Shown in pieces: positions 19,839 through 63,823 of a stretch of 64,000 nt of DNA. The number at the start of each line of letters is the position of its first letter. The stretch's first letter is position 1. The stretch covers positions 142,752 to 206,751 of the IMG/VR virus record IMGVR_UViG_3300017917_000952; one strand, written 5' to 3'. The notes under the pieces are model-generated. The model was given only the letters and a program-made list of their open reading frames with translations, did not search any database and was not told the DNA's origin. A program made the translations under genes and the position numbers.

Positions 19839-21053
19839 TTAATTATCCGCCCTTGGTTTTAGTGCCTTGCTTAGTGCCTGTCGTTCAGGAACAACCTTAC
19901 CTGAAATAGTTCCAGTATTTGTATTGTTAACAAATCCTGCTTTTTGTGTTTGCCTAATCGCAGCGCCTTCGAATGCCGTGCCTGGTGCAACATCTTGAGC
20001 ACCAAACTGGTTCATAGTCATTCTGACACCTTGCTCGTGCATTACCCAACGCTTGCCGTCATATTTGAACAATGCATTTGGCAGATAATCTGTTCTTAAA
20101 TAATATTGACCTTTAGCAGGATTACTAGGAAACTGAATTCCGGAACCAAATGGCGCACCATTAGGTGGAACACCATCACCGCCACCTAATCCAACATATA
20201 TCTTTTTGGTAGGCGTATTCAATACAAAACTTGCATCTACTTTAGCATCAACATCAATACTAGCATCGAGGTCCATGTTATCAGTTGCAGCAATATCAAC
20301 TAGGCCGCGATCATCTGTAGGAATAACAAATAAGTGTTTGTCAGTATAACCGCTTAATGGTGCATCTGCTTGTGCTTGCTCAATAATTTGATTGTTAATA
20401 TCGATACTCTTCTGATAAGTAGACAATAGATCCCGTAGAGTACTTCCGTCGCCCGCACCGCTGTCGGCATCAAGAATCTGTGCAAATTCCTGTGTATCAA
20501 CTAGAGGTTGACACTTAGCACGTAGTAAGTGAGGATACCATGTTTGACTAAAACCGTTAGCGGGTCTGCTCACATCAGTTACAACATAAAATCTTTTCAA
20601 TGCGACCTGTGCATCATCTAAGGCATACTCGTCCTTTAGATGCGGTAACTCAAATACATCGCCAGGCATAATTTTACGGCCGATAGTATCTACACAATTT
20701 CTTAAATGAAAATGCACCATGATGTTGTCATTATTAAGAAATAAACCAAACTGACTTAGGTTAAAATCTAAGTCCTGCATTTGATAGATACCTCTTAAAA
20801 CATACACATCTGGTTCATAAATTCTATCTCTGTTCTCCATAAACAATAAGTCCTGAATACCTACTTCGGGTATAGGGTTAGTGCTGTTATTAGGAGTGCT
20901 AGGAGTGCTTTCTCCTTCAGCAGGCGCTGTAGTACCTGCATATTTGTGAATAAAGATATCAGTTCCGCCGACCTGAAATTCTTCGTTAATTACACGGTCG
21001 AGAAACTTGAAATCATTGCCCTTTTCGGGACGGTAAAGAGAAAGTCTTGGCAT
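19839..21053 (-). CDS. Neck / head-closure protein (gp14-like)
   Basis: DLLFMENRDR.Y, LSQFGLF and PGDVFELPH motifs; divergent from the gp13-like gene. Confidence 0.55.
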   Translation of the reverse strand: MPRLSLYRPEKGNDFKFLDRVINEEFQVGGTDIFIHKYAGTTAPAEGESTPSTPNNSTNPIPEVGIQDLLFMENRDRIYEPDVYVLRGIYQMQDLDFNLSQFGLFLNNDNIMVHFHLRNCVDTIGRKIMPGDVFELPHLKDEYALDDAQVALKRFYVVTDVSRPANGFSQTWYPHLLRAKCQPLVDTQEFAQILDADSGAGDGSTLRDLLSTYQKSIDINNQIIEQAQADAPLSGYTDKHLFVIPTDDRGLVDIAATDNMDLDASIDVDAKVDASFVLNTPTKKIYVGLGGGDGVPPNGAPFGSGIQFPSNPAKGQYYLRTDYLPNALFKYDGKRWVMHEQGVRMTMNQFGAQDVAPGTAFEGAAIRQTQKAGFVNNTNTGTISGKVVPERQALSKALKPRADN

Positions 21054-21060
21054 AGTCTTG

Positions 21061-21077
21061 TATTTATTCGCTAAATA
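21061..21077. promoter_or_regulatory. Back-to-back divergent late promoters (TAAATA on each strand)
   Basis: Minus TAAATA 21061-66 lies 7 nt from the ATG at 21053; plus TAAATA 21072-77 lies 5 nt from the ATG at 21083. Confidence 0.7.
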
Positions 21078-21082
21078 GTGTT

Positions 21083-21841
21083 ATGACTGAGAACGAACTA
21101 GAACGCCAACGAGTTATTGACTATTGCAGAACTATGCTAGGTGATGGCATGGTTGATGTTGAGCTCGACCCTGCACATTACAACACTGCTATAGACAGAG
21201 CATTAGCAAAGTTTAGACAGCGTAGCAGCAACGCAGTAGAAGAAAGTTTCGGCTTTTTAACTATACAAGTTGACATAAACGAGTACGTTCTTCCAAAAGA
21301 AGTCATGAATGTGCGCCAACTTTTCCGTAGAAGTATTGGTAGCAGAAGCGGCGGCGGAGAAGGCGGTACGCTATTTGAACCGTTTAATCTAGCATATTCC
21401 AACACCTATTTGCTGGCCAGTTCTAACATGGGCGGCCTTGCAACTTATTATGCTTTTGCAAGTTATCAAAAGCAGGTAGGAAAGATGTTCGGTAGCGATA
21501 TTAATTTTACATTCAATAAAACTACAAAGGTCTTAACAATAATGCAGCGCCCCCGCGCTGAAGAAGAACTGTTGTTATGGATGTATAATCACAGGCCCGA
21601 CTTTAATCTTTTACAAGATCCTCAAGCAGGGCAATGGTTAAAAGACTACAGTCTTGCAACCTGCAAGTTAATGCTAGGCGAAGCCCGCGAAAAGTTCAAC
21701 AGTATTTCTAGCCCACAAGGCAGTACAAGTCTAAACGGTGCAGCACTCAAGGGAGAAGGCAAGGCCGAGCTCGAAGCACTAGAACAAGAATTGATCAACT
21801 ACAAAGACGGCGGAACCCCACTTACTTTTGTAATTGGATAA
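21083..21841 (+). CDS. Neck protein (gp13-like head-tail adaptor)
   Basis: YC...LG...VDVEL, WLKDYSLA..K..LG....KF and G..SLNG motifs of gp13. Confidence 0.75.
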   Translation: MTENELERQRVIDYCRTMLGDGMVDVELDPAHYNTAIDRALAKFRQRSSNAVEESFGFLTIQVDINEYVLPKEVMNVRQLFRRSIGSRSGGGEGGTLFEPFNLAYSNTYLLASSNMGGLATYYAFASYQKQVGKMFGSDINFTFNKTTKVLTIMQRPRAEEELLLWMYNHRPDFNLLQDPQAGQWLKDYSLATCKLMLGEAREKFNSISSPQGSTSLNGAALKGEGKAELEALEQELINYKDGGTPLTFVIG

Positions 21842-21843
21842 CA

Positions 21844-22587
21844 ATGACAAATTTTAAAGAAGACAGTGTCGTACTTGATACGATTAATCCAACTGAGCCA
21901 ACGTCTTCAACGTTATCAAACGGGCAGGTTATAGATCACAAGTGGTATCTAAAGGGCGGCGGCAACGATCACTATCCGTATTTTTTAAAAGCAATAGCCG
22001 GCACAGGAAAATCTCAGTATAACAGATGTTTTGAGTGGTGTAGCGGCCATGGCATTATAGGTTGGGAAATCCTTACAAGAAATCTGTGCAATGAATTGAC
22101 ATTTTCAGATTGCTACGACCTAGCAATAGATACCTGTTTAAAAAATGCAGTAAAACTAGGGTACCAAAATGTAGTTAGAGGATATGTAACTCCTACAATT
22201 ACAGGAATTCCTAAAACAGAAAAATGGGACTTAGTTGTAGGTAACCCTCCTAATTCTGGTGATGCTACTGGGTTCTTAAAGCAACAAGACACAGCAGGAC
22301 AGCCTCAAGAATTAGTAAATCTAGCAATAAGGATTACTGTAGACCAAGACTGGGAAGCACATAAAGATTTTTTTAAAAATATAAGCGACTATATAACAGA
22401 TGATGCAGATATATTTTTATCCATGCATGACACTATGTTCTTGATGATGGAAGAAGAAATTTATGGCCCAGAGGGGTTTTATGTAGTATCTATAACTGAT
22501 TTAAAATCCGACGATGGTGTGTATGTTACGGACCCGGGTTTAAAAATCGTCCACTTTAAGAAAAAAATCTTGACACCCTCAGTCTAA
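21844..22587 (+). CDS. SAM-dependent methyltransferase (HemK/amino-MTase-like)
   Basis: EWCSGHGIIG motif I; WDLVVGNPP motif IV. Confidence 0.7.
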   Translation: MTNFKEDSVVLDTINPTEPTSSTLSNGQVIDHKWYLKGGGNDHYPYFLKAIAGTGKSQYNRCFEWCSGHGIIGWEILTRNLCNELTFSDCYDLAIDTCLKNAVKLGYQNVVRGYVTPTITGIPKTEKWDLVVGNPPNSGDATGFLKQQDTAGQPQELVNLAIRITVDQDWEAHKDFFKNISDYITDDADIFLSMHDTMFLMMEEEIYGPEGFYVVSITDLKSDDGVYVTDPGLKIVHFKKKILTPSV

Positions 22588-22598
22588 GATAATAAATT
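22570..22598 (+). promoter_or_regulatory. Sigma70-type promoter for the dNMP kinase gene
   Basis: TTGACA-17-TAAATT; GGGGA RBS before 22622. Confidence 0.55.
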
Positions 22599-22621
22599 AT
22601 AGTATCACGCTAGGGGATGCT

Positions 22622-23688: not shown

Positions 23689-23718
23689 TAAATATATCAA
23701 AGTGAATCCTTTAAGGAG
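23689..23718 (+). promoter_or_regulatory. Late promoter TAAATA plus TAAGGAG RBS for the tail sheath gene
   Basis: CTAAATA, then a short leader with a strong RBS. Confidence 0.6.
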
Positions 23719-23724
23719 TTTAAT

Positions 23725-26700
23725 ATGGCAACATTACAATCACCAGGCGTAAGCGTATCAGTTATAGATGAGAGTTTCTATACACCCGCAGGCGCCGGTA
23801 CAGTTCCGATGATCTTCGTAGCAACTGGTCAAGATAAACCAAATGCATCCGGAACTGGCATAGCGCAGGGAACAACAGCAGCGAACGCTGGTAAAGTTTG
23901 GGTAATTACAAGTCAACGTGACTTGTCCGATACATTCGGTGTACCTTACTTTGAAACAGATTCAAGTGGCAACCCTGTACACGGCGGAGAACTAAACGAA
24001 TACGGTCTACAAGCCGCATACAGCGCACTTGGAGTTAGTTCCAAGGCTTACATCGTTAGAGCAGACATTAACACTTCTGAACTAGCACCTAACCCTTCTA
24101 TTCCTGGCGGTACTCCTGTTAACGGAACATACTGGGTAGTTACTTCAAACACAGATTTCGGTATCAACGAGTGGAACGCAAGCACTAAGCGTTTCGTTAC
24201 TAAGACTCCTTTAATCATTGATAACACAAACGTTGAGCTAGATTTTGATCACCAGGCTGTTAGCCCAGCAGGTACAATAGGTCTACCAAGAACAGCGTTT
24301 GGAACTGTTGGCGACTACGCAGTTTTAGTAACCAGCGACAACGGTACCCAACACCCAGAAGGTGTATACTTCAAGTCTCCTACAAATGGATGGGTAGATG
24401 TGTTAGACGGATTTGACGGAGGTAAGGTTGTTAGACTAAGCGAACACTTTAATTATCCTAACTACACAAACGCAGGTCCTGGCGCACTAAATGCACCTAC
24501 AGGCAGCGTTTGGATCAAGACTACTGCACCGGGCATGGGCGCAAACTGGGACATTAGAAAGTACAATGCAAGCACAGACAACTGGGATCGTGTAAGTGCT
24601 CCTCTATATCCAAGCACACAGGCTGCACTAGCAGACCTAGACGGTGTAGGTGGTGGATCAAACATTCCATTAGGATCTGTATTTGTACAGTACGATCCAC
24701 AAGAAACAAACATGGCAGATTTCAGAAAGTGGATTCGTTATAAGTCCGGTCCTACTTCTGTATCAGTCGAAAGCGACTTCGTAGCCTCAGGAAACTGGGC
24801 ATTTGACCTTGTAGAAACTGACGAATTTGGTAACAAGAGTTCCACTGCCACATTCTCTGGTGTTGCATCTCCTGTTGTTTTAGTACAGAAAATTGCTGAA
24901 GCAATTAACAGTAACCTAAACCTAAAGTACACTAAGGCAAGCCATAACACTGTTACAAACAAACTAACTATTACACATAGTTTAGGTGGCGACATTCTAT
25001 TTGCAAATACCGTTGGTCAGCCTTTAGTTGATATCGGATTTGTAGGTGGCAACGTTCCTGAAATCGAAGGCAACATTGCAAACCTATATACCTACAGCGG
25101 CGCATATTGGGACGTCCTTGCTTCTAACTGGAAACCTCTAGTCTACGAAGCACAGGAAACTGCACCAACTACAGCACCAGATGATGGCCAACTATGGTTC
25201 GACAGTGACCTATCCGCAGACATCATGTACAATGATGGGCTACAGTGGGTTGGTTACCTAAACGCATTCCCAGGATCCGATCCAAAAGGTCCTACAATCA
25301 GCGCAACCAAGCCAACTACACAACAAGACGGTGTTACACCTTTAGTTGACGGTGATATTTGGATTGACACTAGCGATCCAGACAAGTACGGTAGAAACAT
25401 TTATGTTTACAATAGCGGTGCTTGGGAAATGGCTGACGTAACCGATCAATCTAGCCCAGACGGTTGGGTATTTGAAGACGCACGTTGGTCCGTCAACGGT
25501 GAAACTGACCTAAGAGCAGATATCGAGGACCTATTACTAAGTGACTATGTTGATCCTGATTGTCCAGATCCACGCCTATATCCACGTGGCACACGACTAT
25601 TCAACACACGCCGTAGCGGTAACAACGTCAAGCGTTATTTTGCAAACTACATCGATCCAGATGTAGAAAATACACGTTATAATGACGAAGGTATGGCCGG
25701 TTACTTCCTAGGTCGCTGGGTAAGTGCAAGTCCAAATGCACCAGACGGTGCAGGCCAGTTTGGTCGTCTTGCACAGCGTAGTGTAGTTGTTAAGGCTCTA
25801 AAAGAAGAAATTGCAAGCAATACTACAATTAGAGATACTGATACACTAGTATTCAACTTGATTACTACCCCAGGTTACCCTGAAGTAATTCAGAACATGG
25901 TTGCATTTAACATTGACCGAGGCTTAACAGCGTTTGTCATTGGTGATACACCATTCCGTCTACCAGCAACTGGAACAGCATTAACAAACTACGGTATGAA
26001 CACCGCAGGTGTTGTTGACAACAACGACGAAGGTGCTGTTACATACGATACTAGCCTAGCAATGTACTACCCAAGCGGTTATACAAATGACAACCTAGGC
26101 AATGCTATTGTTGTTCCGCCAAGTCACGTTATGCTACGTACATATCTAAACAGCGACAACAAGAGCTATCTATGGTTTGCACCAGCAGGTACACGTCGAG
26201 GTGTTGCTGACAACGTAAGTAGTGTAGGTTACATTACTGGCGAGGGCGAATTCCAGACTGCAAGTCTACACCAAGGACTACGCGATGTTTGTGCAGGTGT
26301 TAAGATTAACCCAATCGCAACAATTCCAGGTGTTGGCATTGTTACCATGGGTCAGTACACTCGTGCAAGCGTAGCCAGCGCATTAGATCGAGTTAACGTA
26401 AGTCGTTTAATTGCTCACCTACGTAGACAACTTTCTATCCTTGCTAAACCATACTTGTTTGAACCAAACGATTCTCAAACAAGACAAGAAATCAAGGCAG
26501 CATGTGATGCTCTAATGACAGAATTAGTAAGTCAACGTGCTCTATACGACTTCTTGGTTGTCTGTGACGGAACAAACAACACACCGGCAAGAATTGATCG
26601 TAGCGAACTATGGGTTGATATCGCTATCGAACCAGTGAAGGCTGTAGAGTTTATCTACATTCCTTTACGTATATTGAACACCGGTGAAATATCCGCATAA
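23725..26700 (+). CDS. Contractile tail sheath protein (gp18-like) with large insertion domains
   Basis: N-terminal SPGVSV...DES; C-terminal WFAPAG..RG, INPI, DRVNV.RL, FEPND, NTP..ID, EFIYIP. Confidence 0.92.
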   Translation: MATLQSPGVSVSVIDESFYTPAGAGTVPMIFVATGQDKPNASGTGIAQGTTAANAGKVWVITSQRDLSDTFGVPYFETDSSGNPVHGGELNEYGLQAAYSALGVSSKAYIVRADINTSELAPNPSIPGGTPVNGTYWVVTSNTDFGINEWNASTKRFVTKTPLIIDNTNVELDFDHQAVSPAGTIGLPRTAFGTVGDYAVLVTSDNGTQHPEGVYFKSPTNGWVDVLDGFDGGKVVRLSEHFNYPNYTNAGPGALNAPTGSVWIKTTAPGMGANWDIRKYNASTDNWDRVSAPLYPSTQAALADLDGVGGGSNIPLGSVFVQYDPQETNMADFRKWIRYKSGPTSVSVESDFVASGNWAFDLVETDEFGNKSSTATFSGVASPVVLVQKIAEAINSNLNLKYTKASHNTVTNKLTITHSLGGDILFANTVGQPLVDIGFVGGNVPEIEGNIANLYTYSGAYWDVLASNWKPLVYEAQETAPTTAPDDGQLWFDSDLSADIMYNDGLQWVGYLNAFPGSDPKGPTISATKPTTQQDGVTPLVDGDIWIDTSDPDKYGRNIYVYNSGAWEMADVTDQSSPDGWVFEDARWSVNGETDLRADIEDLLLSDYVDPDCPDPRLYPRGTRLFNTRRSGNNVKRYFANYIDPDVENTRYNDEGMAGYFLGRWVSASPNAPDGAGQFGRLAQRSVVVKALKEEIASNTTIRDTDTLVFNLITTPGYPEVIQNMVAFNIDRGLTAFVIGDTPFRLPATGTALTNYGMNTAGVVDNNDEGAVTYDTSLAMYYPSGYTNDNLGNAIVVPPSHVMLRTYLNSDNKSYLWFAPAGTRRGVADNVSSVGYITGEGEFQTASLHQGLRDVCAGVKINPIATIPGVGIVTMGQYTRASVASALDRVNVSRLIAHLRRQLSILAKPYLFEPNDSQTRQEIKAACDALMTELVSQRALYDFLVVCDGTNNTPARIDRSELWVDIAIEPVKAVEFIYIPLRILNTGEISA

Positions 26701-57815: not shown

Positions 57816-57847
57816 CTAGTGCTCCTTAGTGCGTTGTTGATGTGTGT

Positions 57848-57876
57848 ATTATACGGGTTTTTGGATGACCCGTCAA
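57848..57876 (-). promoter_or_regulatory. Early promoter P2, TTGACG-17-TATAAT
   Basis: Shared leader ending TAAGGAGCA. Confidence 0.85.
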
Positions 57877-57885
57877 CCACTAAGG

Positions 57886-58343: not shown

Positions 58344-58346
58344 TGC

Positions 58347-58544
58347 TTACTCCTCGTTGATCAGGCTAACACCGAACAGGCCCAGCATGGCGCAGGTCAC
58401 TGCGGCACCAGCAAGGGCGAACCACTCTTTGAATCCTGCTTCGGGCGGCAGGTTCTCAACACCGCCAGCGACACCCATGAACCCGATGATGCAGAGGACC
58501 ACTGCCACTGCGCCGATGTTTTTGACCTTTTGCTTGAATTCCAT
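58347..58544 (-). CDS. Small two-TM membrane protein
   Basis: Own promoter and RBS; two hydrophobic segments. Confidence 0.7.
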   Translation of the reverse strand: MEFKQKVKNIGAVAVVLCIIGFMGVAGGVENLPPEAGFKEWFALAGAAVTCAMLGLFGVSLINEE

Positions 58545-58570
58545 TGTGTGCTCCTTGTTGCGATGTATGT

Positions 58571-58599
58571 ATTATAAGGCCGATTGGCCTCAGTGTCAA
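58571..58599 (-). promoter_or_regulatory. Early promoter P3, TTGACA-17-TATAAT
   Basis: The -35 contains the TGA stop of the upstream gene; 28-bp leader identical to P8. Confidence 0.85.
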
Positions 58600-58829
58600 C
58601 CCCAGTTCTTCTTGTCGCCGAACTGTTCGTTGTCACGGTAGCCTGCGGTGTAGGCTGCGATTTCTTCTGCGGTCATGCAGGCCATCTCAACCCGCGGGCT
58701 GGTCATCGTTGCACCCACATAGAAGTGAGGGTTGAAAGGACGGCCGTAGTAGGAATCGGCACTGCCACGATCGTAAGGGCCACCGTGGCGTTCATCATAG
58801 CCCGCTTTGTTCATCTCTTGCATCAGCAT
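58596..58829 (-). CDS. Hypothetical early protein (HGGPYDRGSADSYY motif)
   Basis: Own promoter and RBS. Confidence 0.75.
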   Translation of the reverse strand: MLMQEMNKAGYDERHGGPYDRGSADSYYGRPFNPHFYVGATMTSPRVEMACMTAEEIAAYTAGYRDNEQFGDKKNWG

Positions 58830-58857
58830 CTCTGCTCCTTTGTGTGTCTATGTGTGT

Positions 58858-58886
58858 ATTATACGATCAAAACGGCACGTCGTCAA
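58858..58886 (-). promoter_or_regulatory. Early promoter P4, TTGACG-17-TATAAT
   Basis: The -35 is encoded by the F-D-D codons of the upstream gene. Confidence 0.8.
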
Positions 58887-59097
58887 ACTCGTATTGTTCG
58901 TCGTACCAGTTGTCGTTGGTCTGGGGCGTCAGGACCGTGTCAACATGAACGGTGCCCAGGCTTTGCAGTTCCTGGATCTCCTGCTTGATTTCAGCACGGC
59001 GGGCATCAATCTTAGCATTGGACTCAGGGTCCAGTTCGCCAGCGATCTCGTCCAGGTAGATCAGTTCTTCGTACAGGTTGTTGATCTCGTCTTGCAT
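58867..59097 (-). CDS. Acidic early protein with SSB-Ct-like tail (EFDDVPF)
   Basis: Own promoter and RBS; C-terminus resembles bacterial SSB DFDDDIPF. Confidence 0.7.
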   Translation of the reverse strand: MQDEINNLYEELIYLDEIAGELDPESNAKIDARRAEIKQEIQELQSLGTVHVDTVLTPQTNDNWYDEQYEFDDVPF

Positions 59098-59123
59098 CGT
59101 GTGCTCCTTGTTGTGATGTGTGT

Positions 59124-59153
59124 ATTATACACTCGCAATGGCTGACAGAGCAA
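59124..59153 (-). promoter_or_regulatory. Early promoter P5, TTGCTC-18-TATAAT
   Basis: The -10 contains the TAA stop of the upstream gene; shared leader. Confidence 0.7.
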
Positions 59154-59238
59154 CCATAATCCAGATGGCAATCAGTTGAGCGATGCCAAAGTAGAACATG
59201 GCCCAAACCACTGTACAAAAACCAATGATCTTCAACAT
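59125..59238 (-). CDS. 37-aa membrane peptide (MLKIIGFC...IASV)
   Basis: TAAGGAG RBS; entirely hydrophobic; 3' part of ORF 59125..59427. Confidence 0.6.
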   Translation of the reverse strand: MLKIIGFCTVVWAMFYFGIAQLIAIWIMVALSAIASV

Positions 59239-59248
59239 CGTGCTCTCC

Positions 59249-59563
59249 TTAGCGGCAGACTTGACCGTAGAACTGACCTTGCTGGGTGTAGAGGGGGAAG
59301 CAACCGTTGGGCGCAGGGTAGGCAGGGCTATACTGCGGCAGGGTGCGAACTTCGGGCTGTTGGTACACAGGCGCAGGCAGGGTCTGCGTCTGTTGATAGA
59401 CAACCTGCGGCTGAGGCTGAACAACAACCTGCGGGCGGCTCATCTGTTGGTAGATCCAGTAGCCTGCAACACCAGCCAGGGCGCCTTGTTCACGGGGACC
59501 CCAAGCCAGTGCAGAACCTGTGGCTGTGATTGCGATCAAACCTGCTACGATTGCCTTTTTCAT
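59249..59563 (-). CDS. Secreted/periplasmic Pro-Gln-rich protein
   Basis: Signal peptide MKKAIVAGLIAITATGSALA; own promoter and RBS. Confidence 0.7.
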   Translation of the reverse strand: MKKAIVAGLIAITATGSALAWGPREQGALAGVAGYWIYQQMSRPQVVVQPQPQVVYQQTQTLPAPVYQQPEVRTLPQYSPAYPAPNGCFPLYTQQGQFYGQVCR

Positions 59564-59594
59564 CTTGAGCTCCTTTTTCGCTGTCGATGTGTGT

Positions 59595-59623
59595 ATTATA
59601 CGGCCGTTGGAAAAACCTGTCAA
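59595..59623 (-). promoter_or_regulatory. Early promoter P6, TTGACA-17-TATAAT
   Basis: Exact consensus; upstream AACCCT motif. Confidence 0.85.
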
Positions 59624-59626
59624 CCT

Positions 59627-59971
59627 TTAGGGTTGTTGTTTTTCTGCCACATGCTTGCACTGACCGCGGAACTTGAACCCAGGACAGGTACAGGACCAAA
59701 CGCCATCTTCTTCAGTGAGGTAATACTTCTCGCCACGACTGCCCTCTACGGTGATCACGCCCGGGTCCACGGTTGGAGTGCCTTCTTCAAGCTCAACAAA
59801 GGTCCTGCCTCGCGTGTCGAGCTTCAAGGGGTTCTTGAACTTGAACAACTTCTTAGAACCTCTGGGCACATAGGCCACAGCCTGCGTCATCGAGTCGTTC
59901 ATCACGTAGACGTGGTTGCAGTTCTGACCAAAGCCGTCAGTCCAAGTAGTGGTCTCAAGCATTATCTTCAT
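59627..59971 (-). CDS. SWIM zinc-finger protein (leaderless)
   Basis: WSCTCPGF.FR..CKHV motif; ATG 6 nt after TATAAT. Confidence 0.8.
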   Translation of the reverse strand: MKIMLETTTWTDGFGQNCNHVYVMNDSMTQAVAYVPRGSKKLFKFKNPLKLDTRGRTFVELEEGTPTVDPGVITVEGSRGEKYYLTEEDGVWSCTCPGFKFRGQCKHVAEKQQP

Positions 59972-59977
59972 GACTGT

Positions 59978-60006
59978 ATTATACGGTCAATCGATCTGGA
60001 TGTCAA
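59978..60006 (-). promoter_or_regulatory. Early promoter P7, TTGACA-17-TATAAT-6-ATG (leaderless)
   Basis: The -35 lies inside the V-D codons of the upstream gene. Confidence 0.8.
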
Positions 60007-60172
60007 CCAAGCGGCCTTCGCGGAAGATGAAGTATTCGTTGATCATGCCGTAGTAGGCCCAGATGCAGTCGTTGCCCGGGACCAGGGTGTAGCTCTTGAT
60101 CCCTCGCTTTTCATAGTGCTCTGCAACCAGAAGGACTTCCAGTTCGTTTAGGCTAGGGTCAATTCGGATCAT
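59987..60172 (-). CDS. Hypothetical early protein
   Basis: 61 aa; ATGA coupling. Confidence 0.65.
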   Translation of the reverse strand: MIRIDPSLNELEVLLVAEHYEKRGIKSYTLVPGNDCIWAYYGMINEYFIFREGRLVDIQID

Positions 60173-60384
60173 GCTCGCTCCATCATTCTCATCAGTTCAT
60201 TGTGCAGGTAGCCCATTTCCTCGTGCTCCACATAGAAGTCAGTACGGGGATCCCAGTAGCGACCTTCCTTCGGATCGTAGTACAGAACACGACCACCTGC
60301 GAACACGAACGGTCCTTCGAGGCCTTTGCGTGGGCCGTAGCCCTGGAGCAGTTCTTCCGTCTTACCAAGCACCTTGTATCCCAT
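60169..60384 (-). CDS. Hypothetical early protein (GLEGPF...LYYDPKEG.Y.DP.TD motif)
   Basis: Own promoter and RBS. Confidence 0.75.
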   Translation of the reverse strand: MGYKVLGKTEELLQGYGPRKGLEGPFVFAGGRVLYYDPKEGRYWDPRTDFYVEHEEMGYLHNELMRMMERA

Positions 60385-60410
60385 AGTCTGCTCCTTGTTG
60401 CGATGTATGT

Positions 60411-60439
60411 ATTATATCACCAATTGGAGTGCCTGTCAA
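60411..60439 (-). promoter_or_regulatory. Early promoter P8, TTGACA-17-TATAAT
   Basis: The -35 and spacer lie in the upstream coding sequence; its stop abuts the -10. Confidence 0.85.
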
Positions 60440-60764
60440 CCTCTTCTTGCGTGAATTGCCCGCCGCTACGGTCGGGATTTGCGGCCCAACTCTCCTGCAA
60501 TCTGCGCTCGCGCTCTGCTTCGTGCTTAGGGTCAATGTAGGCACTGTCCAGCAAGAGTTGATAGGCCAACTTCTCCAGGTTTGAGGGCATGTCGCCCATG
60601 GCTACACGGTTAGGAATCCGCTCCAGTTCGTCGATGCACTTCTGCACGAAGTCCACATGCATCTCAATGCCCACACTGTGCATAGGACGAAGCAGAACGA
60701 CGGGAGCAGTGCCCTTGGGTTGCAGGTTAGCCCTAAGGCGTTGGATGATGTCTTGGTCTTTCAT
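60417..60764 (-). CDS. Hypothetical early protein
   Basis: 115 aa; C-terminal SW..NPDRSGGQFT.EE motif. Confidence 0.65.
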   Translation of the reverse strand: MKDQDIIQRLRANLQPKGTAPVVLLRPMHSVGIEMHVDFVQKCIDELERIPNRVAMGDMPSNLEKLAYQLLLDSAYIDPKHEAERERRLQESWAANPDRSGGQFTQEEVDRHSNW

Positions 60765-60925
60765 ACGTTCACCTGTAAGACAACAGTTTCGTCGTCGTAT
60801 TCGTTAGCCTCGAAGTGATCCACCTGCTCTACATCGTAGATCTCTCCGCCCATGTTGTCATTAACTTCGACCAAGCAATCCTGCGGCATGGTCTTCAGGA
60901 TCTTGATCAGTTCTGCTACAGTCAT
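60761..60925 (-). CDS. 54-aa acidic hypothetical protein (MTVAELIKIL...), not in the ORF track
   Basis: Manually translated open frame; AAGGA RBS; ATGA coupling. Confidence 0.65.
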   Translation of the reverse strand: MTVAELIKILKTMPQDCLVEVNDNMGGEIYDVEQVDHFEANEYDDETVVLQVNV

Positions 60926-60926
60926 T

Positions 60927-61115
60927 TCAACGGTCCTTCAGTCGCTTCATGACCTTGAGCAGGTCGGGGTTGTTTTTGATCTTCTCCATAGCAGCCTCTT
61001 GCCGCTCCCACAGCAGGCGCTCGGCTTCAGTTTCCAGATTGTTGGCATAGTGGCCGTTGCCGCGATTCTGATCCTGCTTCTGCCACTTTGCGATCTGCTT
61101 CTTGGAAACTTTCAT
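60927..61115 (-). CDS. Hypothetical early protein
   Basis: Start MKVSKK after AAGGAGCA and promoter P9. Confidence 0.7.
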   Translation of the reverse strand: MKVSKKQIAKWQKQDQNRGNGHYANNLETEAERLLWERQEAAMEKIKNNPDLLKVMKRLKDR

Positions 61116-61142
61116 CGTCTGCTCCTTGCTGTCTATGTGTGT

Positions 61143-61184
61143 ATTATACCTTCTTTTGGATAACCCGTCAACCAAACGGGTTAT
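61143..61184 (-). promoter_or_regulatory. Early promoter P9, TTGACG-17-TATAAT, with 9-bp inverted repeat ATAACCCGT/ACGGGTTAT
   Basis: Repeat arms at 61160-68 and 61176-84. Confidence 0.85.
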
Positions 61185-61309
61185 TCGCTCCAAACGGGTT
61201 CGAAGGTGTAGCCCTTTTGCTGATAGTAGAGTCCATCGAAACTCTGCCAATCGCGGATGGGGATTACCAGTCCCAACTCTACTACACGGTAAGCAACAAT
61301 CGTCTTCAT
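61181..61309 (-). CDS. 42-aa hypothetical protein (leaderless)
   Basis: TATAAT-ACACAC-ATG; MKTIVAYR... Confidence 0.6.
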   Translation of the reverse strand: MKTIVAYRVVELGLVIPIRDWQSFDGLYYQQKGYTFEPVWSE

Positions 61310-61315
61310 GTGTGT

Positions 61316-61345
61316 ATTATACAGTCTCTTTGGCAGTTTGGACAA
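61316..61345 (-). promoter_or_regulatory. Early promoter P10, TTGTCC-18-TATAAT-6-ATG (leaderless)
   Basis: The -10 contains the upstream TAA stop. Confidence 0.7.
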
Positions 61346-61457
61346 CCGAATTGTCAAACAATGTGCCACCGTAGGCCTGCTGGAATGTCTGGGCAGTGGC
61401 CAGCAGGTAGAACTGATAGACGCGGCCGGTAGGAGTGATCAGTGTGTACTTCATCAT
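61317..61457 (-). CDS. 46-aa hypothetical protein (MMKYTLITPTGRVYQFY...), not in the ORF track
   Basis: Manually translated; TAATG overlap with the upstream gene; ends in the P10 -10 box. Confidence 0.6.
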   Translation of the reverse strand: MMKYTLITPTGRVYQFYLLATAQTFQQAYGGTLFDNSVVQTAKETV

Positions 61458-61641
61458 TACTTCTCGATTTTAACGCAAATGGGGGTCTTGATGTTCATGC
61501 CCCAGCGGAGATCGTCAACGGCCTTGTAGACAACCTTAGCGGCTGCTTCGCACTTTTCTTTAGTAGTGTGAACTCAGGGCCCATGTTCCAGTTGCTACCA
61601 GTGCCTACTACAATCATGACCCAAACAACCATTGCGTTCAT
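61457..61641 (-). pseudogene. Small exported/membrane protein gene with a frameshift near 61566-61570
   Basis: Removing 2 nt (AC) joins MNAMVV...GPEF to TTKEKCEAAAK...ICVKIEK*, whose stop overlaps the next ATG. Confidence 0.6.
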
Positions 61642-61668
61642 CGTGTGCTCCTTACTGTCTATGCATGT

Positions 61669-61711
61669 ATTATAACACCGTTTTGGATAACCCGTCAACC
61701 ACTAGGGTTAT
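61669..61711 (-). promoter_or_regulatory. Early promoter P11, TTGACG-18-TATAAT, with ATAACCC-11-GGGTTAT
   Basis: 21 bp identical to P9. Confidence 0.8.
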
Positions 61712-61717
61712 AGAGTC

Positions 61718-61751
61718 AAAAGAATAGGGCGGCTCTCCCGAGCGGCCCTAT
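61718..61751 (-). terminator. Intrinsic terminator with GGGA tetraloop
   Basis: ATAGGGC-C-GCTC-GGGA-GAGC-C-GCCCTAT-TCTTTT. Confidence 0.75.
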
Positions 61752-61823
61752 CCAACACTAACACGGCTGAGGGAGCAACTCAACCGGCCCGGGACACTAC
61801 CCCCGGGACTTCGGAGCAACCAA
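61718..61823 (-). ncRNA. Candidate structured 3'-UTR/small RNA with two GUUGCUCC anti-SD motifs
   Basis: Three hairpins, two with G-U pairs that form only on the minus strand; no ORF; ends in a terminator. Confidence 0.4.
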
Positions 61824-62093
61824 TTAAGCGAGGCCTAACTGGATGGCACGGTAACCAGCGGCAACAACACGACGGCTGGGCATACCGATTTCATATTCGG
61901 TAACAGTAACACCATTACCAGCCTTGCGAGTGTTTGCATAAACAGCATAACCTGCTTGACGGATACGGCTTGCCTCTGCGGCAACGTTCTTGATACCGAA
62001 ACGCTTCTGTGCTTCAGAAGCAGTAACTTTCTCACCACTCTTCAATGCGGTCAGCATCTTGAATGTCTTTGTACCTTGATTGATCTTCAACAT
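61824..62093 (-). CDS. Winged helix-turn-helix DNA-binding protein
   Basis: L.AL.SG...T..EA..RFG..N..A..S.IR..GY pattern; CAAGGA RBS. Confidence 0.75.
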   Translation of the reverse strand: MLKINQGTKTFKMLTALKSGEKVTASEAQKRFGIKNVAAEASRIRQAGYAVYANTRKAGNGVTVTEYEIGMPSRRVVAAGYRAIQLGLA

Positions 62094-62109
62094 TTTCTTT
62101 TCCTTGTTT

Positions 62110-62162
62110 TTAGACTGCTGTGCAGTTGATATAATAGTACAGCAGTCTAAGGTCAAGGTCAA
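62110..62162 (-). promoter_or_regulatory. Promoter P12 (TTGACC-17-TACTAT) with 12-bp perfect inverted repeat TTAGACTGCTGT/ACAGCAGTCTAA, operator-like
   Basis: Arms at 62110-21 and 62139-50 flank the -10 and start site; the -35 contains the upstream TGA. Confidence 0.7.
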
Positions 62163-62377
62163 GCATCAATCTTGCCAAATTCTTTTTGTGTGTAGTATTG
62201 GTTTAACCTACGCTGAATCATCGTAAGCAGATCACCGTGATCGTCCGAAACAATGAATCGGACAGGGCAACGGCCCCAGGTGTTGTGCTTGACGAATTCA
62301 AAATACCATTTGCGGTGCTGACGATTCGTCTCGTCAAAAGCCACCCAAGGTCTACCAACGAATGCTAATCTGCTCAT
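62159..62377 (-). CDS. Hypothetical protein (RP.V.FD..N..HR...W..CPVRF motif)
   Basis: GGAG RBS. Confidence 0.7.
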   Translation of the reverse strand: MSRLAFVGRPWVAFDETNRQHRKWYFEFVKHNTWGRCPVRFIVSDDHGDLLTMIQRRLNQYYTQKEFGKIDA

Positions 62378-62467
62378 CTGTTTGCTCCAGTGAATATCCC
62401 GCTGTATTGTGTAGATACCCGGTCTTACGGCACTCTGGCCCGCCGGGCGCCTTCACACGGCAGTAAC

Positions 62468-62884
62468 TTAGAACGGAGCGTCTTCCAGTTGTGCTTCGAC
62501 TTCAGCCTTGGAAACAACAGTTTCTTTGACAGCGGTCTTAGCCTTAGCAGCCTTGGCCTTTGCCTTGATAGCGTCCATAGACGGCTTGGACTTCTTGGCA
62601 GGAGCCTTGGCCTTAGGTGCAGCCTTAGCAGCCTTAGGGGTCTCGGTGCGCTTCTCAACCTCTGCTTCGATAGCGGCACGAACTGCGGCATTGCCGTTGT
62701 CAAAGTTGATCTGAAGCAGGAATGCCACAGCCTCGTCTTTGGTCATCGGATGCTTGAGCTCGATGATATCAATGTCCTTGTGGCCGTTCTTGGCCAGGAC
62801 CTTAACACGCATCTGATCATTAGCAAAGCGAGCCTTGATCTTGCCGTTGAGAGTAGAAACACCTGCGAACTTGAATGTAGACAT
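62468..62884 (-). CDS. Protein with histone-H1-like Ala/Lys/Pro tail ending LEDAPF
   Basis: AKAAPKAKAPAKK repeats; AAGGAG RBS. Confidence 0.75.
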   Translation of the reverse strand: MSTFKFAGVSTLNGKIKARFANDQMRVKVLAKNGHKDIDIIELKHPMTKDEAVAFLLQINFDNGNAAVRAAIEAEVEKRTETPKAAKAAPKAKAPAKKSKPSMDAIKAKAKAAKAKTAVKETVVSKAEVEAQLEDAPF

Positions 62885-62944
62885 GAAAATCTCCTTGTGT
62901 GTATGTCTGTGAATGTCTGCGTCATTACCTAACGCATTAATAAT

Positions 62945-62973
62945 AGTTTAACGTCTTTGGACAGGTTTGTCAA
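62945..62973 (-). promoter_or_regulatory. Promoter P13, TTGACA-17-TAAACT; leader has a 5' hairpin
   Basis: Leader hairpin UGCGUUA-5-UGACGCA followed by a CA-rich tract. Confidence 0.7.
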
Positions 62974-62983
62974 CCAAAATGTG

Positions 62984-63169
62984 TCAAGAGTTTAGTGTGT
63001 TGTATGGGCTAAGTTCATCCTCCTGTGGCGAATCTGCCACACCAAAACTTTCCAGAACCTCGAGCACCGTTTCGATTGGGCAGTTCAGTTCTGCGGCAAT
63101 CCGTTTGGCACTCAGGCCGTCAATGTACAGTTGTTCAATGTCGTACAGTAGCTCTGCAACCTTGCTCAT
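62984..63169 (-). CDS. Small HTH-like protein
   Basis: G.SA..IA..L.CP...V..V pattern. Confidence 0.6.
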   Translation of the reverse strand: MSKVAELLYDIEQLYIDGLSAKRIAAELNCPIETVLEVLESFGVADSPQEDELSPYNTLNS

Positions 63170-63552
63170 TCTTCGTTCTCCATTGCTTGAAACTCAAAAG
63201 CCTCGCTCAGCAGTCCGTCAAACTCACCGTAGAACTCCACGTACCAACGGCCGTCGCGACGCAGGATATAGTTGTATTCTTCGAACTGGCCGTTCTTGCG
63301 ATAGTCAGCATAGTCCTTAAACATACGCTGAGGGCAGTCCTCGCCGCGTTCCTTGTAGAACTCACAGCCGTCAACGGTCTCGCTCAGCGTAGACATGTCG
63401 CCGTTGTCCAGCAGTTCGCGGACTTCGAACGGATCGGTGTAGGCATTCAGCAGGATCTTGCCGTTGTGATCCAGGTAGCCATCCCAGTGGCAGTAGATTT
63501 GACCCACGGTACCGTCTGCGTATTCCAGGGCGATCATGCTTCGTGTTGCCAT
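63166..63552 (-). CDS. Hypothetical phage early protein (M.TRS.I...YCHWDGY family)
   Basis: Own promoter and RBS. Confidence 0.75.
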   Translation of the reverse strand: MATRSMIALEYADGTVGQIYCHWDGYLDHNGKILLNAYTDPFEVRELLDNGDMSTLSETVDGCEFYKERGEDCPQRMFKDYADYRKNGQFEEYNYILRRDGRWYVEFYGEFDGLLSEAFEFQAMENEE

Positions 63553-63586
63553 TTGCGTTGCTCCTTAGTGCGTTGTCGATGTGCTA

Positions 63587-63615
63587 ATTATACAGTGGTT
63601 TTACCAACCTGTCAA
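63587..63615 (-). promoter_or_regulatory. Early promoter P14, TTGACA-17-TATAAT
   Basis: Leader shares 18 bp with P2. Confidence 0.85.
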
Positions 63616-63619
63616 CCAA

Positions 63620-63763
63620 TTACTTGGCCTTTTTGGCGGGCTTCTGCTTGGCTTCCTGGGCAGCAATCTTGCCACTGTAGGCACTGCCGGCCTTGTGGAT
63701 CAGACCAGTCTTGGTGAAAGTGATAGTGCCGCCAGTGCTAGAAGGAATAGTTTTGCCGATCAT
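63620..63763 (-). CDS. 47-aa basic hypothetical protein
   Basis: Start MIGKT after GGAGCA and P15. Confidence 0.65.
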   Translation of the reverse strand: MIGKTIPSSTGGTITFTKTGLIHKAGSAYSGKIAAQEAKQKPAKKAK

Positions 63764-63794
63764 TGTGTGCTCCAATTGCGTTGTTGATGTGTGT

Positions 63795-63823
63795 ATTATA
63801 GCAGGACTTCTAAGCCCTGTCAA
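63795..63823 (-). promoter_or_regulatory. Early promoter P15, TTGACA-17-TATAAT
   Basis: Exact consensus; TAACCCTAG motif upstream. Confidence 0.85.

What the first reader, a model, noticed from the sequence alone, without database searches (positions are those of the whole stretch)
21051..63823. Integrated hypothesis: SD-led early to leaderless late translational switch
Inference joining three observations: most early cassette genes depend on a GGAGCA RBS; a candidate RNA under a possibly autoregulated HTH gene exposes anti-GGAGCA loops; many late genes, plus primase and the gene before uvsW, lack any SD and would be immune to SD occlusion. Caveat seen in sequence: the tail tube RBS (26703-10, AAGGAGCA) would also match the seed, so extra specificity would have to come from the CA-rich leader.
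Basis: inference. Interest (0 to 1): 0.65.

Follow-up and report, generated by a model that had tools for sequence, protein, structure and literature searches.

The report
Anti-leader RNA and leaderless late genes

Summary
All three observations are in the sequence, but the synthesis holds only in part.

1. Thirteen sigma70-type promoter-leader cassettes lie on the minus strand (57.4-63.8 kb). Nine carry GGAGCA, and two have no leader at all.

2. A ~105-nt structured RNA (61718-61823, minus strand) follows a winged-HTH gene. It is conserved in at least 53 viral contigs, shows covarying stems, and is absent from Rfam.
   - New: beyond GCUCC, its invariant loop UAGUGU is the reverse complement of ACACUA.
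   - ACACUA is the second commonest hexamer of the relatives' early leaders (52% of leaders; controls 0-1.3%).
   - The order is colinear and antiparallel.
   - RNA type and leader type change together between clades.

3. Twelve late starts in the window have TAAATA 5-7 nt before ATG.
   - With a gp55-like sigma in the contig and T4 promoter geometry, +1 falls on the A of ATG.
   - This layout is conserved at orthologous genes in 40-75 relatives.

Against a single switch:
- Leaderless starts also occur among early genes.
- Sheath, tube (GGAGCA, conserved), gp32 and UvsX are SD-led.
- A CheckV-complete relative has cassettes and leaderless late genes but no recognisable RNA.

Best reading: an anti-leader sRNA acts on cassette mRNAs, and leaderless late initiation is an older, separate trait. 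There are no transcript data.

The parts
57394..63823 (-). Array of 13 early promoter-leader cassettes: TTGAC(A/G)-N17-TATAAT, a ~20-25 nt CA-rich G-poor leader, GGAGC(A), then ATG. Each heads one to three small ORFs.
   Evidence: Eighteen sigma70-like sites, all on the minus strand, against 5.7+-2.4 in shuffles. SD type across the 13 cassettes: 9 GGAGCA, 1 GGAGCT, 1 GGAACA, 2 leaderless.
59969..60006 (-). Leaderless early cassette: TTGACA-N17-TATAAT + 6 nt + ATG (59971) of a 114-aa ORF.
   Evidence: The same TATAAT+6+ATG layout recurs in most relatives.
61307..61345 (-). Second leaderless early cassette: TATAAT + 6 nt + ATG (61309) of a 42-aa ORF.
62110..62162 (-). Promoter of the wHTH gene (TTGACC-N17-TACTAT by the consensus scan), with the inverted repeat TTAGACTGCTGT/ACAGCAGTCTAA (62150-62139 and 62121-62110). 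Candidate operator or 5'-UTR hairpin.
   Evidence: Relatives keep a CTG(Y)-N4-7-(R)CAG inverted repeat just after the -10, and its arms covary (ACTG/CAGT, GCTG/CAGC, GATG/CATC).
61824..62093 (-). Winged helix-turn-helix gene, 89 aa. Its SD is AAGGAA, not GGAG.
   Evidence: PF14090 E 6e-7; phrog_4973 E 8e-13. 117 relatives in viral contigs. The SD is AGGAA-type in 27/27 unique RNA-bearing leaders.
61718..61823 (-). Structured RNA ('anti-leader' RNA), the 3' UTR of the wHTH gene.
   Evidence: No Rfam family matches.
61813..61820 (-). RNA site 1: GUUGCUCC, mostly unpaired 5' stretch. Complement of GGAGCAAC.
61788..61807 (-). RNA hairpin 1: CCCGGGG / loop GUAGUG / UCCCGGG. The core GGGGUAGUGUCC is invariant, and UAGUGU (61799-61794) is the complement of ACACUA.
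   Evidence: Invariant in 23 aligned copies. Four pairs show compensatory change; 0/500 shuffles reach the covariation score. Complementarity to leaders.
61764..61786 (-). RNA hairpin 2: an 8-bp stem presenting the loop UUGCUCC (61778-61772).
   Evidence: Four different stems carry the same loop in relatives (win/L202, L201, L207, L255).
61752..61763 (-). Single-stranded linker UGUUAGUGUUGG. UUAGUGU (61761-61755) is a second complement of the ACACUAA leader box.
   Evidence: (conserved in type A RNAs).
61718..61751 (-). Intrinsic terminator of the RNA: AUAGGGCCGCUC-GGGA-GAGCCGCCCUAU plus a U tract.
   Evidence: In type B relatives the terminal hairpin has 9 pairs with compensatory changes.
21072..21085 (+). 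Late promoter box TAAATA + 5 nt + ATG (head-tail adaptor gene). It lies back to back with the next entry inside a 29-bp intergenic space.
21051..21066 (-). TAAATA + 7 nt + ATG (21053) of a virion structural gene, divergent from the previous entry.
27405..27418 (+). Terminator, then TAAATA + 5 nt + ATG (second tube-like gene).
   Evidence: 41 distinct orthologous upstream sequences listed, all TAAATA + 4-6 nt + ATG, mostly 5.
29724..29739 (+). TAAATA + 7 nt + ATG (virion protein).
31229..31242 (+). Terminator hairpin, then TAAATA + 5 nt + ATG (large terminase).
   Evidence: About 70 relatives at 63-92% aa identity keep the spacer length while its sequence varies.
32819..32834 (+). TAAATA + 7 nt + ATG (661-aa virion protein).
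46026..46040 (+). TAAATA + 6 nt + ATG (virion structural protein).
51408..51443 (.). Back-to-back late boxes in a 30-bp intergenic space. Minus strand: TAAATA + 7 nt + ATG 51410 (AlgH-like). Plus strand: TAAATA + 6 nt + ATG 51441 (nucleotidyltransferase-like).
53312..53327 (-). TAAATA + 7 nt + ATG (53314), 180-aa ORF.
53586..53599 (-). TAAATA + 5 nt + ATG (53588), 84-aa ORF.
55731..55745 (-). TAAATA + 6 nt + ATG (55733), 255-aa ORF at the border of the early block.
23689..23727 (+). Leadered late start: TAAATA + 30-nt leader with AAGGAGT + ATG (tail sheath).
26703..26717 (+). Tail tube RBS AAGGAGCA + ATG. It has no ACACUA box.
   Evidence: GGAGCA is kept in about 40 relatives, many with TAAATA 10-14 nt upstream.
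53614..53646 (+). Late box TAAATA + 24-nt leader with GGGAGCA + ATG (89-aa ORF). This is a late-promoter gene that carries the 'early' SD.

Best explanation
The window is the end of a 207-kb fragment of a T4-superfamily jumbo phage. CheckV rates the fragment 58% complete, and complete relatives are 330-365 kb. Its expression programme joins transcription and translation initiation in three ways.

(a) Early genes.
- Host sigma70 promoters fire from repeated cassettes.
- Most cassettes give a short CA-rich leader ending in GGAGC. In relatives, half also carry an ACACUA(A) box.
- Some cassettes put the ATG 6 nt after TATAAT and so give no leader.

(b) Late genes.
- A gp55-like sigma reads TAAATA.
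- At the first gene of many late units the box sits 5 (4-8) nt before the ATG, so transcription should start on the A of AUG and give a leaderless mRNA.
- The most abundant late proteins keep a leader with a strong SD.

(c) The RNA.
- The 3' UTR of an autoregulated-looking wHTH gene is a structured RNA.
- Its two conserved single-stranded motifs, 5' GCUCC ... UAGUGU 3', are complementary in colinear antiparallel order to the two leader boxes, 5' ACACUA ... GGAGC 3'. The window's RNA carries the pair twice.
- I infer that it base-pairs with cassette leaders across the SD and lowers their translation or stability. That would make it a post-transcriptional brake on early genes, analogous in purpose to T4 RegB/RegA.
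- Late mRNAs would escape because they lack the leader boxes, not because they are leaderless.

What is shown and what is inferred:
- Shown: the sequence features, their conservation, the covariation of the stems, and the complementarity statistics.
- Inferred: transcription start points, that the RNA accumulates, that pairing occurs, and its direction of effect.
For: Cassettes:
-.

Late sigma:
- phrog_12791 E 4.5e-85 at contig 122255-123172.

Promoter geometry:
- The T4 late TATA box lies about one helical turn upstream of +1 (PMC2988020).
- gp55 flips the bases at -12, -9 and -8 (PMC7892883). With the T4 box TATAAATA, known from the T4 literature, that register puts the box at -13..-6. TAAATA-N5-ATG then puts A at +1.

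TAAATA statistics:
- It is the rarest of its 15 permutations (110 copies). 22% of copies sit 4-8 nt before a long-ORF ATG, against 0.3-7% for the permutations.
- In 1.1 Mb of relatives, 301 of 857 TAAATA have such an ATG (194 at exactly 5 nt). Only 14 have GTG or TTG.
- The spacing is conserved at orthologous genes while the spacer sequence varies.

RNA:
- 53 contigs carry it, one copy each, and 46 place it directly 3' of the wHTH gene.
- Hairpin 1 covaries. The terminal hairpin has 9 compensatory pairs.
- 164 of 215 GCUCC nucleotides are unpaired in MFE folds.

Complementarity:
- UAGUGU/ACACUA is the top hit of all RNA hexamers. It is found in 50% of the loci's own leaders, against 0% for reversed and 1.3% for shuffled leaders.

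Clade-level co-variation:
- Type A/B RNA loci: RCACUA in 83/147 leaders.
- Type C loci (AUUCGCUCC loops, no UAGUGU): 13/72, but GGAGCGA-type SDs.
- No RNA: 2/40.

Self-avoidance:
- The wHTH SD is never GGAG when the RNA follows it (0/27), against 9/17 where no RNA follows.
Against: - There are no transcript or 5'-end data.
- Each pairing box is short (5-6 nt). The position after GGAGC does not covary consistently: many type B RNAs read CGCUCC while their leaders read GGAGCA.
- In this window only 3 of 13 cassette leaders carry RCACUA.
- Leaders with both boxes exist in a complete genome with no recognisable RNA (G009). The boxes are therefore not maintained by the RNA alone.
- The RNA is made from an early sigma70 promoter, at the same time as its proposed targets.
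- The clade comparisons are not corrected for phylogeny.
- RNAalifold offers an alternative fold in which GCUCC pairs with the invariant GGGGU.
- Cofold energy gains do not separate early from late start regions cleanly.
Confidence: 0.45

Rival explanations
1. The RNA occludes GGAGCA ribosome-binding sites and so drives a global switch from SD-led early translation to leaderless late translation. Leaderless design would be the means of escape.
For: - GGAGC/GCUCC complementarity and exposed motifs.
- GGAGC is commoner in cassettes of RNA-bearing loci: 177 of 246 leadered cassettes, against 18 of 40 without the RNA. Fisher p = 0.0015, uncorrected for phylogeny.
- Leaderless late starts are real.
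Against: - Leaderless late starts are present in all relatives examined, with or without the RNA. G009, complete, has them together with cassettes but without the RNA.
- Early promoters also make leaderless starts.
- Sheath, tube, gp32 and UvsX are SD-led, and the tube keeps GGAGCA in about 40 relatives.
- GGAGC is not avoided outside the early block (10/41).
Confidence: 0.15
2. The element is a cis-acting 3' UTR: a terminator plus a stability, processing or protein-binding module for the wHTH mRNA. The invariant GGGGUAGUGUCC loop would be a protein recognition site. Its complementarity to the leaders would be coincidence, or a relic of descent from an inverted leader. Early shut-off would be purely transcriptional.
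For: - The element sits directly after the stop codon in 46 of 53 contigs, with no separate promoter visible in the window.
- Twelve invariant nucleotides in a hairpin are typical of protein binding.
- The antisense strand of a leader reads GCUCC...UAGUG, so descent from a leader is conceivable.
- Leaders keep their boxes without the RNA in G009.
Against: - Only the two boxes are retained, each held single-stranded, while the stems around them change.
- The window's RNA holds the pair twice.
- Type C RNAs drop UAGUGU, and their genomes' leaders mostly lack ACACUA.
- A few contigs have the RNA without the wHTH gene upstream.
Confidence: 0.27
3. The conserved leader boxes are recognition sites for a protein. 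Candidates are a RegB-like endoribonuclease, a RegA-like translational repressor, or host S1 or CsrA. The RNA would act as a protector or competitor, or would be unrelated.
For: - T4 RegB cuts GGAG in early SDs, and the sequence 3' of GGAG sets its specificity (PMC3014915).
- C after GGAG is not explained by pairing with the canonical 16S tail (established knowledge). Yet it is found in 10/13 early SDs against 10/41 others.
- The boxes persist without the RNA (G009).
Against: - No REGB_T4 (PF10715) match in the contig.
- No RegA by tblastn.
- The contig is only 58% complete, so absence is weak evidence.
- This model does not explain why the RNA's two exposed motifs are the complements of the two boxes.
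Confidence: 0.1

Closest known systems
c4 antisense RNA of phages P1 and P7 (Rfam RF01695; Citron and Schuster 1990, cited in PMC2864571)
   Same: It is a small phage-encoded RNA. It presents two short single-stranded elements that pair with two boxes in a target leader and so cover its ribosome-binding site. This description of the mechanism is from established knowledge.
   Different: - No sequence or structure match: Rfam scans gave no hit.
- c4 controls one operon (icd/ant) for lysogenic immunity. Here the proposed targets are a dozen or more repeated early leaders of a lytic jumbo phage.
T4 RegB endoribonuclease and RegA repressor (PMC3014915)
   Same: The purpose is the same: post-transcriptional silencing of early mRNAs through their SD region. 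Middle and late messages are spared by sequence context.
   Different: - The agent is a protein, not an RNA.
- No RegB or RegA homologue was found in the contig.
- The context here is GGAGC plus ACACUA, not GGAGRAYARAA.
Leaderless transcripts of Thermus phages phiYS40 and Lalka27a (bioRxiv 10.64898/2026.04.20.719267)
   Same: [quoted passage not shown]
   Different: - The Thermus hosts use leaderless mRNAs widely (PMC12340547).
- Most transcripts of those phages are leaderless.
- Here the element is a T4-type gp55 late box, only first genes of some units are affected, and the host is unknown.
PeSL cassettes (promoter-early stem-loop) of T4-type phages (PMC2839356, PMC4122927)
   Same: Repeated early-promoter modules flank small variable ORFs in a hyperplastic region of a T4-like genome.
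   Different: - Terminator-like stem-loops are not enriched in the window's array (11 against 8.5+-3.6).
- The repeat here extends through a conserved leader and the SD.
Staphylococcal RNAIII and Rsa sRNAs with C-rich (UCCC) loops
   Same: C-rich hairpin loops pair with SD sequences of several mRNAs. This is from established knowledge and was not checked in a paper here.
   Different: - They are host-encoded.
- They have no second box.
- Their fold is unrelated.

Membership tests
T4-type late promoter / gp55 system | A phage-encoded gp55-family sigma factor. | tested here: met
   tblastn with T4 gp55 gives E 1e-6. The ORF at contig 122255-123172 hits phrog_12791 'sigma factor for late transcription' at E 4.5e-85 and phrog_234 at E 4e-26.
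T4-type late promoter / gp55 system | A TATAAATA-like box with no -35 element, upstream of late (virion) genes. | tested here: met
   TAAATA lies upstream of the adaptor, tube-like, terminase, sheath and virion genes. It is depleted elsewhere in the contig. It is conserved in relatives.
T4-type late promoter / gp55 system | Transcription starts about 6 nt after the box. | not testable with these tools
The geometry is taken from T4 (PMC2988020, PMC7892883).
Leaderless mRNA | [quoted passage not shown] | not testable with these tools
   Inferred only. The spacing peaks at 5 nt (194 of 857 boxes in relatives), and intergenic spaces of 29-30 bp hold two divergent boxes.
Leaderless mRNA | The start codon is AUG, with no SD. 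| tested here: met
   301 ATG against 14 GTG/TTG at 4-8 nt. The spacers are AT-rich and variable and hold no SD.
PeSL cassettes of T4-type phages | A repeated early sigma70 promoter flanking small ORFs in a variable region. | tested here: met
   Most ORFs have no family match or only families of unknown function.
PeSL cassettes of T4-type phages | A terminator stem-loop joined to the promoter. | tested here: not met
   Terminator-like sites are not enriched in 55.7-64 kb (11 against 8.5+-3.6).
c4 antisense RNA (RF01695) | Match to the Rfam covariance model. | tested here: not met
   No hit at gathering score in the window. No hit at E<=10 in 61600-62200. No hit at E<=1 in five relatives.
Trans-acting base-pairing sRNA | A conserved, structured, terminator-ended transcript unit. 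| tested here: met
Trans-acting base-pairing sRNA | A single-stranded seed complementary to its targets beyond chance. | tested here: met
   UAGUGU/ACACUA is found in 50% of own leaders against 0-1.3% in controls. GCUCC/GGAGC is the second match. The motifs are unpaired in MFE folds.
Trans-acting base-pairing sRNA | Seed and target covary across lineages. | tested here: inconclusive
   Co-variation at the level of whole modules is seen between clades. Nucleotide-level covariation next to GGAGC is weak: own 6.28 against other 6.03 bp. Nothing is corrected for phylogeny.
T4 RegB | A REGB_T4 domain protein. | tested here: not met
   No PF10715 match in the contig. The contig is 58% complete, so absence from the phage is not shown.

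The most novel reading that the evidence does not exclude
A family of uncultivated ~350-kb T4-like phages encodes a dedicated 'anti-leader' sRNA. Its bipartite seed (GCUCC plus UAGUGU, duplicated in this genome) would recognise the shared leader of a dozen or more early promoter cassettes at once and shut them off after transcription. That would be an RNA counterpart of RegB. The late genes of these phages start at promoters fused to the start codon and would be intrinsically blind to it.
Probability: 0.15. Interest if true: 0.8.

Novelty: new variant of a known kind. Interest (0 to 1): 0.62.

Why it matters
- **Late promoters.** T4 late promoters are the textbook case of a minimal promoter. 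A whole clade in which that box is fused to the start codon would show a second, independent route to leaderless phage messages, outside Thermus. It raises the question of how the unknown host translates them efficiently.
- **The RNA.** Regulatory RNAs of lytic phages are few. One RNA matched to a repeated leader would be a compact way to control many unrelated early genes together. It would also give the conserved leader of the mobile cassettes a function beyond promoting recombination.
- **Testability.** Both ideas can be tested with cloned parts in a laboratory strain, without the uncultivated phage.

Tried and rejected
- **Known phages.** There is no DNA similarity to known phages. The closest named relatives are only distant: PA5oct, Atu_ph07 and Rak2-like phages at 33-47% sheath identity.
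- **Public RNA or DNA runs.** No transcript ends could be examined and read laying was not used.
- **Rfam.** No family matches the RNA, in the window or in five relatives.
- **RegB and RegA.** Not found.
- **Generic promoter pattern.** A scan of viral contigs with it returned only unrelated single hits and was dropped.
- **Nucleotide-level covariation next to GGAGC.** Weak.
- **Duplex and cofold energies.** They did not separate early from late start regions well and were not used as evidence.
- **PDB.** A sequence search for the wHTH protein found nothing.
- **Hairpin-loop scan for GCUCC.** In this contig it found only the RNA itself in non-coding DNA. In G009 it found two unconvincing sites inside minus-strand coding context.
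- **An altered host anti-SD as the reason for GGAGC.** Considered, but the host is unknown, so it stays untested.
- **PeSL membership.** Only partly met: there are no stem-loops.

Full report
**What the DNA is**

- The window is the last 64 kb of a single 206,751-bp viral contig. IMG/VR classes it as linear and CheckV rates it 58% complete.
- It has no nucleotide match among 50,697 phage records.
- Its proteins place it in the T4 superfamily of jumbo myoviruses:
  - tail sheath 33-47% identical to PA5oct, Atu_ph07 and Rak2-like phages;
  - gp32-like SSB, UvsX, UvsW-type helicase, DnaB-type helicase, primase, large terminase, tube and head-completion proteins.
- Metagenomic relatives are numerous: 129 terminase loci and 117 wHTH loci. 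Complete relatives are 330-365 kb.

**Observation 1: early cassettes**

- The minus strand of 57.4-63.8 kb carries 13 copies of one unit: TTGAC(A/G)-N17-TATAATACACACATC..., a CA-rich leader, GGAGCA, 3-5 nt, then ATG.
- A consensus scan finds 18 sigma70-like sites, all on that strand, against 5.7+-2.4 in shuffles. Seven are perfect 12/12 matches.
- SD type across the 13 cassettes: nine GGAGCA, one GGAGCT, one GGAACA. Two place the ATG 6 nt after TATAAT (59971, 61309) and so would give no leader.
- Downstream genes of each small operon use other SDs: GGAGAA, GAAGGA, GAGGAGT, and once GGAGCG.
- The block has 50-53% G+C against about 40% elsewhere.
- Relatives have the same design. Leaders differ in detail but are G-poor, and GGAGC is kept in 177 of 200 GGAG-type SDs in RNA-bearing loci.
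- TATAAT+6+ATG leaderless cassettes recur in most relatives.
- The array resembles the PeSL cassettes of T4-type phages (PMC2839356, PMC4122927). It lacks their stem-loop.

**Observation 2: the RNA**

Position and fold:
- Directly after the stop codon of an 89-aa winged-HTH gene (PF14090) lies a ~105-nt stretch.
- It folds into two hairpins and a terminator: -52 kcal/mol, z = -3.2.

Conservation:
- The element is conserved downstream of the wHTH gene in about half of 80 relatives.
- An exact pattern for its 5' module finds 53 viral contigs, one copy each. In 46 of them it lies directly 3' of the wHTH gene.
- The core GGGGUAGUGUCC is invariant in 23 aligned copies.
- The stem around that core shows four pairs with compensatory change. 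None of 500 shuffles reaches the observed score, and slid controls score lower.
- The terminal hairpin of type B RNAs has nine such pairs.
- No Rfam family matches.

Three architectures occur:
- Type A (this window): two GCUCC sites.
- Type B: one GCUCC site, in the 5' single strand.
- Type C: AUUCGCUCC in 9-nt loops, without the UAGUGU hairpin.

In MFE folds, 164 of 215 GCUCC nucleotides are unpaired.

**A second complementarity**

- I scanned every hexamer of the RNA against the early leaders of the same locus, over 31 non-redundant loci and 282 leaders.
- One outlier emerged. UAGUGU, the invariant loop, has its reverse complement ACACUA in 50% of leaders. Reversed leaders give 0% and shuffled leaders 1.3%.
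- ACACUA is the second commonest leader hexamer (52%), after AGGAGC (60%).
- The next-ranked RNA hexamers mostly overlap GCUCC.
- The order fits antiparallel pairing: RNA 5' GCUCC...UAGUGU 3' against leader 5' ACACUA...GGAGC 3'.
- The window's RNA holds the pair twice:
  - GUUGCUCC (61820-61813) with GUAGUGU (61800-61794);
  - loop UUGCUCC (61778-61772) with UUAGUGU (61761-61755).
- RNA type and leader type change together:

| Locus type | Leaders with RCACUA | Leaders with GGAGC |
|---|---|---|
| Type A/B RNA | 83/147 | 100/147 |
| Type C RNA | 13/72 | 58/72, mostly GGAGCGA(A), matching the longer AUUCGCUCC loop |
| No RNA | 2/40 | 18/40 |

- The wHTH message that carries the RNA never uses GGAG as its own SD: 0 of 27 unique leaders. 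Where no RNA follows, 9 of 17 do.
- These comparisons are not corrected for shared descent.

**Observation 3: leaderless late genes**

- Many plus-strand genes have TAAATA a few bases before the ATG.
- In the contig TAAATA is the rarest of its 15 permutations (110 copies). Of these, 24 (22%) lie 4-8 nt before the ATG of a long ORF, with peaks at 5 and 7. The permutations give 0.3-7%.
- The genes are mostly late ones: head-tail adaptor, a tube-like protein, terminase and virion proteins.
- The contig encodes a gp55-family late sigma.
- The T4 late TATA box lies about one helical turn upstream of +1 (PMC2988020). In the gp55 open complex the bases at -12, -9 and -8 are flipped out (PMC7892883). 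With the T4 box TATAAATA, known from the T4 literature, that register puts the box at -13..-6. TAAATA-N5-ATG therefore puts the A of ATG at +1.
- Conservation is striking. About 70 terminase orthologues (63-92% identical) keep a terminator hairpin, TAAATA, five variable bases and ATG. The tube-like gene, the 29737 and 32832 genes and the adaptor show the same over 19-60 distinct sequences.
- In 1.1 Mb of relatives, 301 of 857 boxes have such an ATG, 194 of them at exactly 5 nt. Only 14 have GTG or TTG. That fits the known need of leaderless messages for a 5' AUG.
- Two intergenic spaces of 29-30 bp (21054-21082 and 51411-51440) hold two divergent boxes, which leaves no room for leaders.
- In a few distant relatives the same gene has a 17-20 nt leader with an SD-like motif instead. 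The two designs therefore interconvert.

**Why the synthesis fails as written**

1. Leaderless starts are not specific to late genes.
2. Abundant late or replication proteins are SD-led: sheath (AAGGAGT behind a TAAATA box), gp32 and UvsX.
   - The tube has AAGGAGCA in about 40 relatives, often right behind a TAAATA box.
   - Another late-box gene (53644) has GGGAGCA.
   - GGAGC is not avoided outside the early block (10 of 41).
3. Genes such as primase and the one before uvsW lack an SD because they are internal to operons. About half of all genes in the contig have no SD core.
4. G009 (364,554 bp, CheckV 100%) has:
   - 29 TAAATA-N4-8-ATG starts;
   - 27 sigma70 cassettes, 8 with GGAGC, some also with ACACUAAC;
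   - the wHTH gene;
   - but no GGGGUAGUGUCC even with one mismatch, and no GCUCC element in the non-coding parts of its early region.
   So the leaders and the leaderless late design predate the RNA, or do without it.

**What I conclude**

- The temporal switch is most simply transcriptional: from sigma70 promoters to promoters of the gp55-like sigma.
- Leaderless late initiation is a clade-wide property of promoter placement.
- The RNA is a later addition in one sub-clade. It is best read as an anti-leader sRNA that pairs with the two boxes of cassette leaders and covers the SD.
- The tube and other late messages carry at most one box and would be poor targets.
- I put 0.45 on this combined reading.
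  - Most of the doubt lies in the RNA's action.
  - The leaderless inference alone I would put near 0.8.
  - That the RNA pairs with leaders at all, near 0.5.

**Rivals**

- A cis-acting or protein-binding 3' UTR: 0.27.
- Protein recognition of the leader boxes, RegB-like: 0.1. RegB and RegA were not found, but the contig is incomplete (PMC3014915).

**Compared with what is known**

- In mechanism, the nearest thing is the c4 antisense RNA of P1/P7, which pairs through two loops with two boxes over a ribosome-binding site. The element is not a member of that family (no RF01695 hit).
- In purpose, it parallels T4 RegB.
- Leaderless phage messages are documented for Thermus phages. They were not seen in phiKZ (PMC8244752) or AR9, whose UTRs are 26-491 nt (PMC5312081).
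- My literature searches found no report of gp55-type late boxes fused to start codons. That is absence in the library searched, not proof of novelty.

**Limits**

- There are no expression data of any kind.
- The host is unknown.
- The contig is incomplete.
- Gene starts come from a simple caller of my own.
- Statistics across relatives treat related sequences as independent.

Noticed in passing
window 56000-64000 against the rest: The early cassette block has 50-53% G+C. The rest of the contig has 37-47%, so the composition steps sharply at about 55-56 kb. The reason is unknown. Possibilities are adaptation to host codon use or a different origin of the early genes.
   Followed up: no
window 21054-21082 and 51411-51440: Two divergent late boxes (TATTTA...TAAATA) share intergenic spaces of only 29-30 bp. 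Two polymerase complexes could hardly sit there together. The first arrangement is conserved in relatives (adaptor rows).
   Followed up: partly
whole contig G000 and G009: TAAATA is depleted. In G000 there are 110 copies against 137-396 for its permutations. In G009 there are 281 against 554-697. This suggests selection against stray late promoters.
   Followed up: partly
window 62094-62165 and the same place in L201-L280: The wHTH leader keeps a short inverted repeat, CTG(Y)-N4-7-(R)CAG, right after the -10. Its arms change together between relatives. It could be an operator for the dimeric protein or a 5'-UTR hairpin.
   Followed up: partly
early leaders, window and relatives: The base after GGAG is C in 10/13 early SDs here and in 88% of GGAG-type SDs in RNA-bearing relatives. 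Pairing with the canonical 16S tail does not explain this. The C persists in genomes without the RNA (G001, G006, G009).
   Followed up: partly
alignment A2 (type B RNAs): RNAalifold prefers an alternative helix in which GCUCC pairs with the invariant GGGGU of hairpin 1. All its positions are invariant, so it cannot be judged. It could be a switch that hides the seed.
   Followed up: no
tube gene upstream in G002-G026 (L283-L293): The tube SD is GGAGCA in the genomes with type A/B RNA. It is GGAGA or AAGGA in the five genomes without the RNA and in the type C lineage. This may be clade history, or a sign that the tube message also meets the RNA.
   Followed up: partly
orthologues of window 29737 in L158, L183, L189, L194: In distant relatives the same gene has TAAATA followed by a 17-20 nt leader with an SD-like motif, instead of a fused start. 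Leaderless and leadered designs therefore interconvert.
   Followed up: no
window 9085-16647; 49328-50875; 50859-51410: A 2,520-aa ORF. A B12-binding radical SAM protein (PF04055/PF02310). An AlgH-like DUF179 protein expressed from a fused late box.
   Followed up: no
window 63833-64000 and contig start 1-100: A minus-strand ORF runs off the end of the window, which is also the end of the contig. The early block probably continues beyond the assembled sequence, as it does across the ends of G009.
   Followed up: no
L217 1822-1977: Two tRNA genes sit inside the early cassette region of a relative. None is in this window.
   Followed up: no
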